DNA from: Botryllus schlosseri
Lineage: Eukaryota
Direction of reading: 5' to 3'
Length of the DNA stretch: 64,000 nt
NCBI GenBank assembly: GCA_051294905.1
Contig: CM119372.1
Location: 11,408,001 to 11,472,000 of the forward strand
The notes beneath the pieces are model-generated. The model ran no database searches. It worked only from the letters and a program-made list of their open reading frames with translations, and was not told the origin of the DNA. The position numbers and the translations under genes are program-made. The first letter of the stretch is position 1. Each line of letters starts with the position of its first letter. Of this stretch, positions 20,217 to 28,200 are shown piece by piece.

Positions 20217-23112
20217 CAGTGATTCTCAACCGCGGCTCTCCGAGCCGCATGCGGCTCTCGACTGCTCTCCGTGCGGCTCTCACTAACGATGTGAAATCAT
20301 TGATGCTTCTACGGAAATTCTAATTATTCATGATCATAAATAAATCGCGCCTTCAACACAACAAATGTACGTTTATGTTCACGTTTACTGACGCGAAGGT
20401 CATTCCCTGATCACAATAGAATCCTACGTAATACAAGTTGTACGGGTTGTGACGTAACATTACCGATAGTAATTTCGGTAGGCTTTAAATCCGAACCTTT
20501 ACTGCTTTACTGAAGGCTCTGACCGTCTGACCTAAGCCTAATCAGGTGTCTGTAATGAGACGGGCGAAGTTTATTTCGCTCGAGACGGCGGCTCATATTA
20601 GAATACGGGTGACAAGAGACTCGGTCAATAAGACAATCAACGTTTGGGGTAACTGCAGGTACTTTATTTTCTTACTCTTTGCTTTGATCTTGATAGCGTT
20701 AGAAAATATCGGAGACTTTGGTTCAATGATAATGTCAGGTTCAGATCAACCTGCAAAGAAATCTCGCACCCTTGTGCAAGAAAATCGGGCCTTTCAAAGT
20801 GAATGGGAAGAGGCGTATTTTCAAATTGAGGAAAACGGCAAAGCGAAATGCCTTCTGTGCCCTATAATAATAAACGGTGTAAAATCTTTCAACGTTAAGA
20901 GGCATTATAAAACACATGCGGGAAAATACGACGTCTATCAAGGTGAATCAAGGAAACGGAAGTTAGAATGTCTGAAAGCAGAGCGTAGCAAACAAGGAAA
21001 AATGTTTTTAAAAAAAAAAGAACCCGAAGAGGTAACAATAACATCATATAAGATCAGTCATCTATTGGCCAGCAATATGAAGCCATATTCTGATGGCGAA
21101 ATTACGAAGCAGGCTATTGTTTTGTTTACCGAAGACAATTGTTCTCCTGCCATTCAGCAGAAAGCTAAAAAATTGCAGCTTAGCAATGATACAGTAACGC
21201 GTCGTGTCGATTGCATATCCCAAGATCTGCATGAGCAACTTATTCACAAGTCGCAAGATTTTTCTTACTACTCGCTTGCTCTTGACAGCACTAACGACAT
21301 TACCGACATAGAGCAATTAGCTGTATTCATCCGGGGAGTCATGCCAGATTTCAAGATTTGCGAGGAGTTTCTTACTTTGCGATCTATTCATGGCACAACG
21401 AAGGGAACCGACATGTTTCGTGAATTTCATGCTACTCTTCAAGAAGCGCATTTAGACCCATCGAAATTATATTCATTGGCGACAGATGGCTGCCCAGCAA
21501 TGCTCGGCAAAAATCTAGGTCTTCAAGGACTCGTCAACAAATGGCGTGCTGAACAGAATCTTGACGCTGTGACTTGGCAACACTGCATTATACACCAGGA
21601 AAGTCTTGTTGCTAAATCATTAAAGATGTCCAATGTGACAGATATAGTAATATCGACCGTAAATTGGATTCGAGCAAACGCACTTAACCATCGAAAATTC
21701 AAGGCTTTTCTCACCGATATTGATGCTGACCATGGAGACTTGATCATGTTCACCGCTGTACGATGGCTAAGCCGAGCTGCATGCCTCAAAAGATTTTACG
21801 CGCTACTTCCTGAGATTAAAATATTTGTCGAAGGAAAGAAAGACATCCCTCAGTTGGGAAACGAACACTGGGTTGCTGACTTGGCGTTCATGGTGGATAT
21901 TACCTCACACCTGTCGTCACTAAATCGGAACTTACAAGGAAATAACAAGCTCTGTCACGCCTGGTACGGGACAGTGTCTGGTTTCATTGAGAAATTGTGT
22001 CTTTGGAGAAAGCACCTAGAGGAGGGTGTTACGACACATTTTGTAACGCTTTCAAACCACCGACAGAATGGATCATTCAAAACATATGACCAGGTTATTA
22101 GTACCTTGATTGACGGGTTTAAACGTCGAATAGAGGGAATGCATCATTCCGTACCCCTGATGAATATATTTTCAAACCCAATGGCAGTAGATGCCGCCAC
22201 TGCCCCTGATATTTTTCAGATGGAACTGCTGGACTTGCAGTCCGATATAGAATTGCGACTGTTGTTTCAAAGCAATGGACTCCTTGAATTTTGGGGTGCT
22301 GTTCCTGAAGAAAAATACCCCAACCTGATAGCTAACGCATCGAAGAATGCCTGCATGTTCGGTTCAACCTATGTATGTGAAGCCCTTTTCAGCAAATTAG
22401 TGAGGATCAAAAGCAAATATCGCAACCGATTGACTGATCGTCATCTGAAACAGCTCTTGTGCACAGCTTCCTCCACGATGAAACCTCGTTATGACAAACT
22501 TGTGAAAAATCAAATTCAATTTCAAGTTTCGCACTAAGTTGCAAAATAGATAGTGATCACCACAGATTTAGCGTCACGCCTTGTTCATCCAAACTCAATT
22601 CACATGCTCTCGGAACTCAGAAAGATTGTGGATTAAGTCTCAATAAACATGTTGTGACGCTAAATCTGTGGTGATCACTATCTATTTACTATCTGGAAGA
22701 ATGTAAATTGTAAATCATCCGCAATCGGCTTCAACGGTGAAGGGTATACCTCGGTATACCATCGGTGAAGGGACGTGGCTGGGTAACGTCGTTTCGGAAG
22801 TTGTCCGTATGGGGAGTGCCCGCTGTCACAGTGTCGTCTGGGGAAATTGTCGTATTTGTTTTGGCCGTCGCTGTTTGAGCCAATCGCGGTTTTGGCCGTC
22901 GCTGTTATGGCCGTCGCTGTTGTGGCCAGTCGGTGTTTTGGCCGTCGCTATTAAGGCCGTCGCTATTTTAGCCGTACACCATTTCGTTGATACCATTTTT
23001 GATGATATTTTTCTATTCTCAATAAATTACGTTATTCGTGCCATCATGCGGCTCCCGACAGAGTTGAGGTTCATAAAATGGCTCCCACAGTGAAAAAGCT
23101 TGAGAACCACTG
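20217..23112 (+). mobile_element. Full-length hAT DNA transposon, Buster/Charlie/SPIN-like (2896 bp)
   Basis: TIRs CAGTGATTCTCAA / TTGAGAACCACTG; perfect 8-bp TSD GTATAGAC (20209-20216, 23113-23120); internal transposase ORF. Confidence 0.95.
20726..22537 (+). CDS. hAT (Buster family; GTF2IRD2/EPM2AIP1-like) transposase, ~603 aa from the likely ATG at 20726
   Basis: Uninterrupted ORF with BED-type finger (KCLLC...NVKRHYKTH), catalytic motifs SLALDSTND and LATDGCPAM, HCIIHQESL (CxxH), VRWLSR, and FGSTYVCEALFS. Confidence 0.95.
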   Translation: MIMSGSDQPAKKSRTLVQENRAFQSEWEEAYFQIEENGKAKCLLCPIIINGVKSFNVKRHYKTHAGKYDVYQGESRKRKLECLKAERSKQGKMFLKKKEPEEVTITSYKISHLLASNMKPYSDGEITKQAIVLFTEDNCSPAIQQKAKKLQLSNDTVTRRVDCISQDLHEQLIHKSQDFSYYSLALDSTNDITDIEQLAVFIRGVMPDFKICEEFLTLRSIHGTTKGTDMFREFHATLQEAHLDPSKLYSLATDGCPAMLGKNLGLQGLVNKWRAEQNLDAVTWQHCIIHQESLVAKSLKMSNVTDIVISTVNWIRANALNHRKFKAFLTDIDADHGDLIMFTAVRWLSRAACLKRFYALLPEIKIFVEGKKDIPQLGNEHWVADLAFMVDITSHLSSLNRNLQGNNKLCHAWYGTVSGFIEKLCLWRKHLEEGVTTHFVTLSNHRQNGSFKTYDQVISTLIDGFKRRIEGMHHSVPLMNIFSNPMAVDAATAPDIFQMELLDLQSDIELRLLFQSNGLLEFWGAVPEEKYPNLIANASKNACMFGSTYVCEALFSKLVRIKSKYRNRLTDRHLKQLLCTASSTMKPRYDKLVKNQIQFQVSH

Positions 23113-23707
23113 GTATAGACCATGAACTCTCATTTGCGACATCATACAAATAAATACGTTTCAAACTTCTAAATACCGTTAAAATTTGACTTATTTCTGT
23201 AATTAATGGATAAGCGCCCAACTTCTCGCATTCTGGAATTACGATAATAAAATTCATATATATCTGGCGAACCGGCAGGAAACTTGCCACGGACCTGCAC
23301 CGGCGGTTGAGAACCACTGGTGTATAGCTTCGGCGGCGAGTGGAATAGTGGTGCATTCCTCCATTCCAACACCAATGCGTCGCGGGATTTGGTCGGACTC
23401 TAAAATCCCTGGGCTATCCGTAGGCTCCTCATTCGGCTCATTGCCATCCTGTATACCTACATGCTGTGTCTTAAGAAACATCTAAAAGCGGGCCGTTCTC
23501 TGCTGACAGCTCACTGAGCTCAGACATGAATCATGTAGAGATTAGCGGCCTGTCGTAAAATGATCATTTATGTCCAAACACCGTCAATACAGAATAACAT
23601 ATATAGAGCTGTGGTAAATGTCGATATAGTAGGAATCAAGATGCGATTAACTAACATAAATAATACCGCTAAATAGATTCAAGCATGATAATAATCGATA
23701 TCAGCCT

Positions 23708-25260
23708 CTACAAGCGACATTCCTCTCGGCAATTCCCACACCACGTCTGAAGGTAGGAGCGCTGCTGTACTTCGATAGGTCTCCACAAATTCTTTAGCTC
23801 TGCGACACTGAAAGGCTCAAAGTTCTTCTGTGCCAGTGTTTCCGCTGTTAAATTCAATCACTCATCAACATCAGCCAAACATTTCCCCCAAAGGGTGGAT
23901 AATAGATATTACAGTATCTTCCCTATTATAGCCTAGTCTCAAATTGCGCAAAAAGACTGACAGAGACTTGTGATAGAGGCAACGAGATTGTATCAATATC
24001 TTATGATTTTACTCGTGCCTAATGGACATGCATATGCATATACGTGCACATTGCACAATGTACATTACACAAGCAACTTTGTTTGTCTTATATAGCCATG
24101 ATCAGGCCCCCCTTGGGGTGCGAGAACTGTTCCTAGGTTGCGTTAATGTTAGATCGCTAAAGATTGGTTAGGTCTACTCAAGCATCTCTATTTGTATATC
24201 CTTGGGTCTACTCTACGTAAATACCAAAAAACAAATTCATATATTGCTTTGGAAATTTGCAAGAGCAGTATGCCACTGAATTGTCCCATGTACTAAAAAA
24301 TATCTATTCACTGCAGTGAGCACAAGAGTTTTTCTCTACTACCTTTGTAATCCTTCGTAACGTGTTTAGAGTTCGGTTCATATTTCCTTCGAAATATTTA
24401 CTGCCTTCAACGTGAATTGATGTGTTGCGATAGTTCAGAGCAGCATAATTTACTAATATACGTGACGCAAATCTCAGCGTTTACAACAAAGAATTCGTCA
24501 ACATGTTCCACATCAAATCAGGCAATTACAGGATGATGACACTTCTCCCTCGTCATCACTGTCCCTACGTACCATGTGCGACTGTAGGATCAGCTAACGA
24601 CTTGTAATTCTGTCTTGTCCGGTTACTTGAATAATAATAAAATTAGATCGTTTTGGTATTCAGGCAATTCTATAATGGGGTGCGAGAATTGATTGGTGAT
24701 TGGAATGGGGTGCAGCAAGGAGGAAAGGTTACGCCAGTATAGCTTTTAACACGAGCCGACATTCGGCTCCGTTTCAACACAAAACAAGAGAATATTGGCG
24801 CAACGTCTACTGGCCTACATAAAATCTATAACTGTATCTAACTATCCATTCTAGTGTAATGGATGAAACTGCCCAAACTATACAATGGAACGACTCGTTT
24901 GATTTGCACCCAAAGTTCGATCCAGGATTCCTAGTAGACTCATGAGCATGGGAGACAAGTGGTAACTTTTTTATACAATAAGCATTTCAATACACGGGAA
25001 TTCAATGAATATGAATTGTAAAATCAGATTAACATTCTCTCACCAAAGCGTTTCCTTCTGCCGACAAGCAGCACGTTTCTGCACACAAAGCATAGATGTT
25101 TCGAAGAGCATTCGCCTCTTTTCTCTACCATTTCGTTCGATATTTCACTCATGTCATGATCCGCGTAGTTGTCGAGATCTCCATGACCAGCCCTCAGCAA
25201 ACCATAACCGCTCGTTGAATATGAAGATAACAACACAAGGAAGAAGATCCATGTAGCCAT
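23708..25260 (-). CDS. Secreted peptide/hormone-like precursor (150 aa); exons 25260-25044, 24930-24884, 24581-24530, 23844-23708
   Basis: Signal peptide MATWIFFLVLLSSYSTSGYG; KR, RRKR and RR sites; Cys segments GECSSKHLCFVCRNVLLVG and SYLQTWCGNCREECRL; four GT-AG exons join in frame (phases 1/0/1). Confidence 0.7.
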
Positions 25261-28200
25261 CTGAGTTCGAACAACAAAATATTGATCAGTCCACGGAGAT
25301 TTACTATCAATAATAAATTCAGAATTCATTCAACTGCAAATTTGTTATTGTTTCATAACATCATAGGATTTTGAAACTCTGCCGAAAAGATTGGTAAAAT
25401 GAAACAAAAGCATTTGGATAGAGTCCTGGTGACGAAATCGAAAACGGTGGGCGAACTGGCCCCATGAAAGTGGTGGTAGGGTCATCGTGTCCTATATCGT
25501 AACTGGTATTTACAAGTATATTATACGATGGATATTTCACACTGTGCGACAGATGATAGCACCACCATTTCCATGTTATAAAGGTTGTACTGAAAATATC
25601 CAAAAGTTTTAATTCAAATTTTAGAATTAAACACCGGGAGGGGGGCAACAACGATGCCTATAGTGGACTAAAGTAGAATGTGCAGGCCTAGATGGTGAGG
25701 CATGTCTACTCATGGCCCGTTAGCAGAGGTTCACGCGAATTCACTGTTAGAGTTAGATAAATTGGAAACGTGGTGTCTAGAGATCTGAAATCAGAAGGGA
25801 CGCAGCGTCATTAAACATTTCACTTTACTCAAATAAGGCTGTATACGGTATATGGACAAACTGACACTGCTTTGCACTTGGAAAACATAAGGTGATCTGT
25901 ACTATCAAGGAAAACATCACACGCACAGAAAAATAAATTACGGAACCTTTACCGAAGCCGAAAAAATGTTGCAGAATGTGCATGCAATCCGCACTGAGAG
26001 AAATTGAGTCGGTACAAGGGTTACGACTAATATAAAGACTAATTTCTTGAATAGCGTCGTGGGAATACTATTACACATAACACGCGTTTACCATATTTCG
26101 GATCGCATATTCGTCGCGTCAGATTCAACTAATACAGAGGGCGCACATACCACTTTGGTAAAAAATAAAATTGATTGAACACCGACACACGGCTCATCAT
26201 CAGCATTTTACAAATTCCACAATACTTTCAATGCAGCGCAAAGAAGGAACGAGTCGACACAACTTGATGCAGTCAAACAGCTACCCAAACGGATTCATAA
26301 TTTCGCCAAAGTTTGACAAATCATATGTAAGTGAATAGCTTACCATTTCCGATATGTACATCGTCATAAATAAATATTTCGTTATTCGATATGGAAGTAA
26401 ATACCTGCGTCAAAATGTATTAGAGATGGTGTAACTATAACACCATGTCAATATAATACGCAAACACCTTCGCGTTTTGTTACTACGATCAATATCCACG
26501 TGAAGCAAATATCTTTCTCAACTAATTAAAGAATATATTTCCCTCTTGGTCTGGCTACTCATATTTCCAGATGCTTTGCTGACGAGTGTATACGAAACAA
26601 GACCCGAAAGCAAGGACCAGCTCGTCGCCGCATCGAGTGCGCCGTGACGCTTCAAAAATAATTCCGACGGTCACGTTTTATAGCCTGACCGCTTTTCCCC
26701 TTTTTCTCGTTTCATATCACAGCCGCATTGACGGCAATGTCGGCGAACAATAATTGACTACCATTTGGCGTTTCCGTAATTGAGGTAGATCTCGACATAA
26801 CAATACTTGAAGTCAAATAAAAATAATATGATCCCTCGAGAATAAAAGTATTATCCAAAATTACTCTTTATAATATGATGATGACAGTTAAAATAAGTTT
26901 TCTGACGCATATATTCGCACTATATGAAATATTCAGAACGATAGTCGGTGCAGGTGCGTAAACAGCATGAAAATCTATTCCCATTTACGAATAGCTTGAA
27001 AAGGGAGAAGGCCGTCATTCCGCTTATGCCCCATTGTAATTGGACGTTGGCGTAAAATCTGATAAATATTCCAAAAACGCCCATGATATGTTACAATGAC
27101 GGATCAGAGATATTAAATACACAGTCTATTAGCGTACTGTTATTTGCTTCAACATCAACATTTTTCATCAGTCTCCTTGACGTACCAGTATGCATTTTTC
27201 AGTGATCGACAAAGATAGTTTTCAGATAGTTGTTCCTTGTCATTCTTTTCACGACTACCTATTTAAAATGTTGAATATTTCACAATATGCGATGGTATAG
27301 TAGAATCTGCTGAACACATCTTGAAGGCAAGATCAGAAAAATTCGATCCATAAATCTGCAAGGTCCGTTACGGGCGGCGAAATATTGAGTCATGCCAATC
27401 TAAATAAATACCTGCATTATTTGGAGTTATCAGGGTTGTATAGAGTTATCGTGGTGACGTCATATAGAATAGCGTTCACGCTCGACTTCACAGAGAACCT
27501 TTTACAAAGCCCATGTTCGCACGTACCAGAACCTTTCAGGGGTTCACCACCATCTCTGCTAAAATGTATATCTGAGCGGATCGATTTATGACGAAACTCC
27601 CACGTAAATTGATTGCATTGTGGGACATGATTTCAATGATAAACACAACATATCGAGTGACATATGGTGAAGTATCGTGTTATTACGAAAGAGTTGATTG
27701 CTATCGAGGGCTGCTAATTGTATTTTTGAATTGCATACCGCATTGAGTGCTATATAGTCTCATCCACGTGAAAGGGACTCGGAGAGTAATCCCAGCAAAT
27801 CAGCCAAGTAAATATATATCCTTACCTAGCATACACCCGCTCTGTTATTTCATAAAAAGTATTTTAGTATAGATCAGTCATCATCAGTGATTCTCAAACG
27901 TCGGCCCGTGTGAAGTTTTTCGCCTGTCCGAAGAGTATATTACAATTTTGTATCTCAATCACAAAATGCAATTATTAGGACTGGGCAACATTGCTACGTG
28001 CAAACATTTCCCATTGTCTCCTATGTAATGGGTTTCCTAAACAATCAGACAATCAATGAATTATGTACGCACCATTGCACAGCGATATATTTATCAATAT
28101 TATATAATCCGTTTCTTCGCTGTACCGTACTGATTACACACGACTTTCATTTCTCGATGATGATAATTCTACCTGTTATTGTCGTAGGATCTTTATCAGC

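What the first reader, a model, noticed from the sequence alone, without database searches (positions are those of the whole stretch)
23708..25260. Unrecognised prohormone with two 3-cysteine segments separated by a cleavable linker
Seen in sequence: signal peptide, acidic pro-region, KR, GECSSKHLCFVCRNVLLVG, RRKR, linker with RR, and a C-terminal ...QQR-SYLQTWCGNCREECRL*. Established knowledge: KR/RRKR are convertase sites, and Gly before basic residues signals amidation. Inference: an odd Cys number in each piece implies at least one interchain disulfide, giving an insulin-like two-chain layout but with a 3+3 scaffold (C-x5-C-x2-C and C-x2-C-x3-C) instead of 2+4. It does not match the ascidian peptides I can recall. 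An alternative donor at the last Leu could extend the C-terminus by YTGWQ using the acceptor near 23457.
Basis: partly seen in the sequence, partly recalled or inferred. Interest (0 to 1): 0.75.

Follow-up and report, generated by a model that had tools for sequence, protein, structure and literature searches.

The report
Orphan sea-squirt two-segment cysteine peptide precursor
A small gene in a sea-squirt genome is transcribed and spliced, and it encodes a secreted hormone-like precursor with two three-cysteine segments and no detectable relatives; its gene model is simpler than first read and its function is unknown.

Summary
The gene is real. RNA from four runs joins 25044 directly to 23844 on the minus strand, at a GT..AG intron of 1199 bases. 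In the raw-read run, 26344 also joins 25260. Those reads carry a probable 24-nt spliced leader ahead of the 5' exon.

There are therefore two coding exons, not four.

The direct splice is in frame and gives a 117-aa preproprotein, or 125 aa from an in-frame upstream AUG:
- signal peptide
- acidic pro-region
- KR
- GECSSKHLCFVCRNVLLVG
- RRKR
- a 30-aa linker ending QQR
- SYLQTWCGNCREECRL*

Of five RNA-seq variants in the CDS, four are synonymous. The fifth, R69S, still leaves an R-x-K-R site.

The gene is single-copy in its own genome. Pfam, PDB sequences, a 5.8-billion-protein word search, a full HMMER scan of 1.84 billion representatives and metagenome scans gave no credible relative. Its cysteine framework is not that of insulin.

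The most likely reading is a lineage-restricted precursor cut by convertases. Its two cysteine triplets would pair, and the product would be a disulfide-linked two-chain or helix-linker-helix peptide. Processing, disulfide pairing and function are all inferred.

The scan had noted this same stretch once before (s1-300897).

The parts
26344..26404 (-). 5' exon, which follows an AG acceptor at 26406-26405. Reads carry ATTGGAGTATTTGGTTGTATTA plus a template-switch oligo upstream, so this is probably a spliced-leader acceptor. The exon holds in-frame AUGs at 26367, 26361 and 26346, which would add up to 8 residues (MTMYISEM) to the signal peptide.
   Evidence: joint 26344>25260 in 21 raw reads; loose end at 26406. 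One search gives the sequence, another the frame, the leader copies.
25044..25260 (-). Coding exon 1: residues 1-72 plus the first base of codon 73. The donor is G|GTGAGA, phase 1.
25207..25260 (-). Predicted signal peptide MATWIFFLVLLSSYSTSG (residues 1-18). The cleavage point is inferred.
   Evidence: GRAVY 1.23. No signal-peptide predictor was available.
25123..25206 (-). Acidic pro-region YGLLRAGHGDLDNYADHDMSEISNEMVE (residues 19-46, net charge -6).
25117..25122 (-). Dibasic KR site (residues 47-48).
25060..25116 (-). First 3-Cys segment GECSSKHLCFVCRNVLLVG (residues 49-67; Cys51, 57, 60). The terminal Gly is a potential amide donor. A helix is predicted over residues 54-67 at low confidence.
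25048..25059 (-). RRKR furin-type site (residues 68-71). The minor RNA variant R69S gives RSKR, which is still R-x-K-R.
   Evidence: (25054 C>G, 6 of 46 reads).
23845..25043 (-). Intron of 1199 bases, GT..AG. It contains a short dispersed repeat of about 60 nt (around 24746-24811) and no supported exon.
   Evidence: joint; depth near 0 in the raw RNA run; 32 other matches elsewhere in the genome.
23759..23844 (-). Start of the last exon. It codes the rest of the linker (residues 73-101, AETLAQKNFEPFSVAELKNLWRPIEVQQR), which ends in a single Arg with another Arg at P8.
   Evidence: and 49 (helix predicted from the linker's second half onward).
23711..23758 (-). Second 3-Cys segment SYLQTWCGNCREECRL (residues 102-117; Cys108, 111, 115). 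If the segment is helical, all three Cys fall on one face.
23708..23710 (-). Stop codon TAG.
23552..23707 (-). 3' UTR. Its extent is taken from the RNA contigs and the exact poly(A) site was not determined.
   Evidence: tables 2 and 8.

Best explanation
This is a lineage-restricted, single-copy ascidian gene with one 5' exon and two coding exons, and its mRNA is probably trans-spliced to a leader. It encodes a 117-125-aa secretory preproprotein.

Proposed mechanism; every step after transcription and splicing is inferred:
1. The signal peptide is removed.
2. The proprotein folds in the ER as helix-linker-helix, and the N-terminal Cys triplet (51, 57, 60) pairs with the C-terminal triplet (108, 111, 115).
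3. Proprotein convertases cut after KR48 and RRKR71.
4. Carboxypeptidase trimming and amidation through Gly67 give GECSSKHLCFVCRNVLLV-NH2.
5. An optional monobasic cut after R101 releases the 30-aa linker.

The product would be a disulfide-linked two-chain peptide. The 18+16 form would have a monoisotopic mass of 3958.80 Da and the 18+46 form 7528.68 Da. It would act outside the cell, most plausibly as a signalling peptide and less plausibly as a host-defence peptide.
For: Shown:
- The mRNA is spliced, and the splice is in frame (joints; translation).
- Exon 1 is held in about 20 runs from 7 studies of the same species.
- The variants seen in RNA are 4 synonymous and 1 non-synonymous, and the non-synonymous one keeps R-x-K-R.
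- The gene is single-copy in its genome.
- The sequence shows a hydrophobic signal-like N-terminus, an acidic pro-piece, KR, Gly-RRKR, and 3+3 Cys with none elsewhere in the mature part.

Supporting but weak:
- Single-sequence AlphaFold2 puts helices over residues 54-67 and about 85-116. The best model has pLDDT 80 for the C-terminal piece and about 61 for the helix in the other piece.
- Helical-wheel geometry places Cys108, 111 and 115 on one face, and Cys57 and 60 on one face.
- Language-model neighbours of exon 1 are small neuropeptide precursors, scoring 0.82-0.87. That is below the 0.9 mark, so it is a lead only.

Established knowledge: K/R-R and R-x-K/R-R are convertase sites. Gly before basic residues is an amidation signal. 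Monobasic cleavage is favoured by a basic residue at P4, P6 or P8, and here there is an Arg at P8.
Against: - No ortholog or paralog was found, so conservation of the Cys residues and cleavage sites cannot be shown.
- There is no peptide-level evidence.
- The second linker boundary is only a single Arg.
- The two-piece complex prediction had very low confidence and gave no answer.
- The tissue of expression is unknown.
- The predicted products are nearly neutral, with side-chain (K+R minus D+E) charge +1 for the first segment and 0 for the second. This argues against a classical cationic antimicrobial peptide but does not point to any receptor.
Confidence: 0.5

Rival explanations
1. A single-chain small secreted protein. 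RRKR and/or R101 are not cut, or only the N-terminal pro-piece is removed. The roughly 69-residue helix-linker-helix stapled by three disulfides would then be the functional unit.
For: The linker is predicted to be helical and continuous with the C-terminal Cys segment. It is amphipathic (muH 0.37) rather than looking like a disordered spacer. The second boundary is only monobasic.
Against: Gly-RRKR is a near-ideal furin/PC plus amidation signal. The only non-synonymous variant seen preserves R-x-K-R. KR after the acidic pro-piece is typical of processed precursors.
Confidence: 0.2
2. A host-defence (antimicrobial) peptide precursor with a turgencin-like helix-loop-helix cysteine ladder. The loop would be replaced by an excisable spacer and the acidic pro-piece would mask the peptide.
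For: Turgencins A and B of the ascidian Synoicum turgens have six Cys, C1-C6/C2-C5/C3-C4 bonds, a helix-loop-helix shape and an amidated C-terminus, and their genes are unknown (PMC7024374). Their second-half spacing C-x2-C-x3-C and their span from the first to the third Cys are the same as here. Anionic pro-pieces are common in antimicrobial peptide precursors (own knowledge).
Against: There is no sequence identity beyond the Cys. The first-half spacing differs (C-x5-C-x2-C against C-x3-C-x4-C). The loop is 47 residues against 7-8. The predicted products are not cationic. C-x2-C-x3-C is a common motif.
Confidence: 0.15
3. A highly derived member of the insulin/relaxin superfamily.
For: The order is the same: signal peptide, B-like chain, basic site, excisable linker, A-like chain at the C-terminus. 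The gene plan is also the same, with a 5' non-coding exon and a phase-1 intron inside the linker (the insulin gene structure is from own knowledge). Non-canonical six-Cys insulin-like peptides exist in nematodes (type alpha; PMC3493385).
Against: The defining Cys framework is absent: B C-x(10-12)-C and A CC-x3-C-x8-C. There was no Pfam PF00049 hit and no insulin, relaxin or IGF chain among PDB sequences at E<=10. An extra pro-region lies between the signal peptide and the first chain. Phase-1 introns are common in secreted-protein genes.
Confidence: 0.05
4. A transcribed but functionally unimportant young ORF, where the motif pattern is fortuitous.
For: No homolog was found anywhere, the gene is single-copy, and a hAT transposon lies next to it.
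Against: The mRNA is efficiently spliced and leader-capped. The longest ORF starts at the first AUGs. The order of signal peptide, pro-piece, basic sites and Cys triplets is coherent. Polymorphism is biased to synonymous changes at 4:1, although the numbers are small.
Confidence: 0.1

Closest known systems
Insulin/relaxin-superfamily precursors
   Same: One precursor in the order signal peptide, first chain, basic site, excised connecting peptide, second chain at the C-terminus. Six cysteines are split between the two chains. The gene has a 5' non-coding exon and a phase-1 intron within the connecting peptide.
   Different: The Cys framework is 3+3 (C-x5-C-x2-C and C-x2-C-x3-C) instead of 2+4 (C-x10-12-C and CC-x3-C-x8-C). 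There is no sequence or profile match. An additional acidic pro-region precedes the first chain. The first chain carries an amidation signal.
Turgencins A/B (cysteine-rich antimicrobial peptides of the ascidian Synoicum turgens; PMC7024374)
   Same: Both come from ascidians and have six non-adjacent Cys. The second-half spacing C-x2-C-x3-C is identical, and so is the span from the first to the third Cys. The helix-loop-helix tendency is shared, and the laddered C1-C6/C2-C5/C3-C4 pairing would also fit here geometrically. Both use amidation.
   Different: Turgencins are single chains of 35-36 residues with a 7-8-residue loop, and they are cationic. Their first-half spacing is C-x3-C-x4-C and they are amidated at the end after the last Cys. 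No residue identity beyond Cys was seen. Their genes are unknown, so precursors cannot be compared.
Disulfide-linked heterodimeric peptides such as halocidin (ascidian) or ectatomin (ant), recalled from own knowledge and not tested
   Same: Two short, largely helical chains are held together by interchain disulfide(s), with an odd Cys count per chain.
   Different: In those cases the chains are related to each other, or encoded separately, and are joined by one disulfide. Here two unrelated segments of a single precursor carry three Cys each.

Membership tests
Insulin/relaxin superfamily (Pfam PF00049) | B-chain Cys pair spaced C-x(10-12)-C | tested here: not met
   The first segment is C-x5-C-x2-C and spans only 10 residues.
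Insulin/relaxin superfamily (Pfam PF00049) | A-chain CC-x3-C-x8-C motif | tested here: not met
   The second segment is C-x2-C-x3-C, has no adjacent Cys, and ends 2 residues after the last Cys.
Insulin/relaxin superfamily (Pfam PF00049) | Sequence or profile similarity to family members | tested here: not met
   No Pfam family at E<=10 for either exon peptide. No insulin-family chain among PDB sequences at E<=10.
Insulin/relaxin superfamily (Pfam PF00049) | Precursor order B chain, connecting peptide, A chain, with an intron in the connecting peptide | tested here: met
   RNA joint 25044>23844 lies in codon 73, two residues after RRKR, in phase 1. The layout is met, but it is not specific to the family.
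Turgencin-type ascidian cysteine-rich peptides | Cys framework C-x3-C-x4-C-x7/8-C-x2-C-x3-C in a single chain of about 36 aa | tested here: not met
   Only the second half matches. The first half is C-x5-C-x2-C and the inter-triplet distance is 47 residues.
Turgencin-type ascidian cysteine-rich peptides | Cationic mature peptide, with shared motifs CxMAC and KKxGG | tested here: not met
   Side-chain charges are +1 and 0, and the motifs are absent.
Turgencin-type ascidian cysteine-rich peptides | C1-C6/C2-C5/C3-C4 disulfide ladder | not testable with these tools
   This needs disulfide mapping. The complex prediction gave no answer.
Convertase-processed secretory peptide precursor (a generic kind, not a homology family) | N-terminal signal peptide plus di- or multibasic sites flanking short peptides, with Gly before a basic site | tested here: met
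   Read directly from the spliced ORF. Cleavage itself was not tested.

The most novel reading that the evidence does not exclude
A previously unknown class of chordate (tunicate) two-chain peptide messenger. Two unrelated 3-Cys segments of one precursor would be triple-stapled to each other and the connecting peptide excised. This would be an insulin-like biosynthetic strategy that arose independently of the insulin superfamily, with its own still unknown receptor.
Probability: 0.3. Interest if true: 0.7.

Novelty: new variant of a known kind. Interest (0 to 1): 0.45.

Why it matters
Tunicates are the closest invertebrate relatives of vertebrates. Their peptide repertoire is used to trace how vertebrate hormones arose.

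If the product is confirmed as a two-chain peptide, this would be a precursor built like proinsulin but on an unrelated 3+3 cysteine scaffold. It would add a new peptide architecture and show convergence on the excised-connecting-peptide strategy. It would also give an orphan ligand for receptor de-orphanisation in ascidians.

The case also shows that small, unannotated peptide genes can be recovered from raw sequence and checked with public RNA-seq. If the peptide turns out to be a host-defence molecule, it would be the first gene-level view of a turgencin-like cysteine ladder.

Tried and rejected
- Four-exon model, 'RR' linker and YTGWQ extension: rejected by the RNA joints and depth. The small X2 contigs at 24676-24871 inside the intron overlap a dispersed repeat of about 60 nt with 32 other matches elsewhere in the genome. 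They carry adapter ends and no joints.
- Word-based search of 5.8 billion proteins with the exon-1 ORF: nothing.
- Pfam on both exon peptides: nothing.
- PDB sequence search: only noise, with E of 0.27 and above.
- ESM Atlas: exon 1 gave generic neuropeptide precursors below 0.9, and exon 2 gave no usable hit.
- Full HMMER scan of 1.84 billion representatives with exon 1 gave one hit, P0001 (XP_071824607, an uncharacterised protein of Apostichopus japonicus), at E 1.1e-10. I reject it as a relative. The score sums six near-identical tandem repeats. In BLASTP one repeat is 32% identical to the query over 50 residues (27.7 bits; E 4e-06 for that single comparison only), and no Cys or basic site aligns. 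It is absent from this genome.
- Metagenome scans with both exon peptides: no relatives.
- Own-genome search for paralogs of either exon, and a six-frame motif scan of the window: none.
- Complex prediction with residues 41-72 against the exon-2 peptide: no answer (score 0.02, pLDDT 43-46). This is neither support nor evidence against.
- A loose-end consensus at 25044 (8 reads, agreement 0.65) was not found in the window or the genome. I take it as a mixture and it stays unexplained.
- The spliced full-length protein has no reference, so it was not typed into the fold or search tools. As a result, whole-precursor folding and full-length database searches were not run.
- Turgencin comparison: only the Cys spacing is shared, so membership is not claimed.

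Full report
**What is in the sequence**

On the minus strand an ATG at 25260 opens MATWIFFLVLLSSYSTSGYGLLRAGHGDLDNYADHDMSEISNEMVEKRGECSSKHLCFVCRNVLLVGRRKRF. The reading frame then runs into a G|GTGAGA donor at 25044/25043.

An acceptor at 23846-23845 is followed by ...AETLAQKNFEPFSVAELKNLWRPIEVQQRSYLQTWCGNCREECRL and a TAG at 23710-23708.

**Transcript evidence**

I laid three probable RNA contig sets from three studies and one raw-read RNA-seq run on 22300-26800.
- All four runs show the same joint, 25044>23844. It skips 1199 bases with CT..AC ends on the plus strand, which is GT..AG on the minus strand. It is seen in 33 raw reads from 23 start positions and in one contig from each of the other three runs.
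- No read leaves 25044 for any place inside the intron.
- Raw-read depth in the intron is essentially zero, and depth is zero over 23206-23507.
- A second joint, 26344>25260 (21 raw reads), attaches a 5' exon directly in front of the ATG.

The gene therefore has one 5' exon and two coding exons. Neither is the alternative YTGWQ extension near 23457.

The short contigs at 24676-24871 in one run overlap a dispersed repeat of about 60 nt, which has 32 other matches elsewhere in the genome. They show no joints.

**The 5' end**

Reads that reach 26406 continue with ATTGGAGTATTTGGTTGTATTA and then the reverse complement of a SMART template-switch oligo. The genomic sequence there is ...gacgcAG|GTATTT.

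The 22-mer occurs more than 600 times in the genome. The reversed-pattern control found 0 copies. In 7 of 8 sampled copies it is followed by AG, and in 4 of 8 by AGGT. I read this as a 24-nt spliced leader ending in AAG that is trans-spliced onto 26404. This is inferred and was not tested further.

The 5' exon holds three further AUGs in frame with the ATG at 25260. Translation may therefore begin up to 8 residues earlier (MTMYISEM-), which would only lengthen the n-region of the signal peptide. A second haplotype seen in the reads changes the first of these AUGs to AAG.

**The protein**

The direct splice is in frame, with phase 1 and G|CG coding Ala73. It gives 117 residues:

| Residues | Element | Notes |
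|---|---|---|
| 1-18 | Signal-like segment | GRAVY 1.23 |
| 19-46 | Acidic pro-region | Net charge -6 |
| 47-48 | KR | Dibasic site |
| 49-67 | GECSSKHLCFVCRNVLLVG | Cys51, 57, 60 |
| 68-71 | RRKR | Furin-type site |
| 72-101 | Linker | Neutral; ends QQR, with Arg at P8 |
| 102-117 | SYLQTWCGNCREECRL | Cys108, 111, 115 |

Five variants visible in the RNA reads fall in the CDS. Four are synonymous. The fifth is R69S, seen in 6 of 46 reads, and it turns RRKR into RSKR, which is still R-x-K-R. The numbers are small, but they fit purifying selection and retention of the cleavage site.

Exon 1 is held at 65-100% of its sampled words in about 20 runs from 7 studies of the same species. Some runs from the same studies lack it. 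That is compatible with sample-specific expression but does not prove it.

**Relatives**

Neither exon has a paralog in the 495-Mb genome at E<=10, and no similar motif pair occurs elsewhere in the window. The following searches also found nothing credible:
- Pfam gives nothing for either exon.
- PDB sequences give only noise.
- The 5.8-billion-protein word search gives nothing.
- Two metagenome scans give nothing.
- The exhaustive HMMER scan of 1.84 billion representatives gives a single hit, an uncharacterised 798-aa sea-cucumber protein.

I treat that last hit as spurious. Its E-value of 1.1e-10 comes from six near-identical tandem repeats. In BLASTP one repeat is 32% identical to the query over 50 residues covering the pro-region and first Cys segment. 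No cysteine or basic site aligns.

Language-model neighbours of exon 1 are assorted small neuropeptide precursors scoring 0.82-0.87. That is under the tool's 0.9 mark, so it is a hint about the kind of protein rather than its family.

The searches had limits. Other tunicate genomes could not be searched directly. The spliced full-length protein has no reference and was not submitted. The finding is therefore "no relative found with these queries", not proof of an orphan.

**Structure**

Single-sequence AlphaFold2 predicts one long helix over residues 13-43 of the exon-2 peptide. This covers the second half of the linker and the whole second Cys segment. The best model has pLDDT 80 and the other four have 53-59.

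For the other piece it predicts a helix over precursor residues 54-67, which contains Cys57 and Cys60 but not Cys51. The pLDDT there is about 61.

On a helical wheel Cys108, 111 and 115 lie within 60 degrees of each other, and so do Cys57 and 60. An antiparallel staple of 60-108, 57-111 and 51-115 is geometrically plausible.

A two-piece complex prediction gave no answer (score 0.02, pLDDT 43-46). I count it neither for nor against.

**Mechanism**

The steps that are shown are transcription, splicing, the reading frame and the motifs. The rest is inferred from established rules of the secretory pathway:
1. The signal peptide is removed.
2. The proprotein folds oxidatively and the two triplets pair.
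3. Convertases cut after KR48 and RRKR71.
4. Carboxypeptidase and PAM act on Gly67 to give a Val66 amide.
5. A monobasic cut after R101 may follow.

The predicted products are a two-chain peptide of 3958.80 Da (18+16) or 7528.68 Da (18+46), or 8165.07 Da if the linker stays in.

That presupposes cleavage and full oxidation, and neither has been tested.

**Comparison with known systems**

The layout and gene plan resemble proinsulin. The order is first chain, connecting peptide, second chain. There is a 5' non-coding exon and a phase-1 intron in the connecting peptide. The defining insulin cysteine framework and any sequence similarity are absent, however, so this is not a member. Six-Cys non-canonical insulin-like peptides do exist in nematodes (PMC3493385), but I have no evidence linking them to this gene.

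The nearest cysteine pattern I could document is in the turgencins of the ascidian Synoicum turgens. Their framework is C-x3-C-x4-C-x7/8-C-x2-C-x3-C, with C1-C6/C2-C5/C3-C4 bonds, a helix-loop-helix shape and amidation. Their genes are unknown (PMC7024374).

The second-half spacing and the span of the first triplet agree with this gene. Nothing else does: there is no residue identity, the first-half spacing differs, the loop is 47 residues against 7-8, and the predicted products here are not cationic. I therefore note a resemblance and claim no membership.

**Verdict**

This is a real, expressed, previously unannotated small secreted-peptide gene of a styelid-like ascidian.

Its exon model does not. 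Its two-chain interpretation is plausible but unproven. It is best filed as a new variant of the convertase-processed, disulfide-stabilised peptide precursor kind, of moderate interest until orthologs, peptide masses or an expression site are known.

Noticed in passing
window 26404-26408; own-genome loci L001-L008: There is a probable spliced leader ATTGGAGTATTTGGTTGTATTA(AG). RNA reads carry it between a template-switch oligo and the gene's 5' exon. The 22-mer has more than 600 exact or near-exact dispersed copies in the genome, often followed by AG or AGGT.
   Followed up: partly
window 20546-22537 (+): An intact 663-aa ORF carries a hAT C-terminal dimerisation domain (PF05699, E 2.7e-09), so it is a hAT-type transposase or a domesticated copy. 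Its 3' part is transcribed in the RNA contigs about 1 kb downstream of the peptide gene.
   Followed up: partly
window 24746-24811 (inside the intron): A short dispersed element of about 60 nt has 32 other matches in the genome (most at 85-92% identity). Small RNA contigs from one run map here.
   Followed up: partly
window 26344-26374 and 25044-25260: The RNA reads contain a second haplotype of the 5' exon with four linked changes, one of which removes the first upstream AUG. Together with several exon SNPs, this indicates high heterozygosity in the sampled animals.
   Followed up: partly
window 25044 (loose ends in run X23): Eight reads that end at the exon-1 donor continue with about 54 letters whose consensus (agreement 0.65) matches exon 2 only in the last 10 or so bases. 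The consensus is not found in the window or the genome. It may be a mixture, or an unassembled divergent allele.
   Followed up: partly
window 22627-23117: A separate transcribed block, with contigs in three runs, lies downstream of the gene and is separated from it by about 400 bases of zero depth. Its strand and identity were not determined.
   Followed up: no
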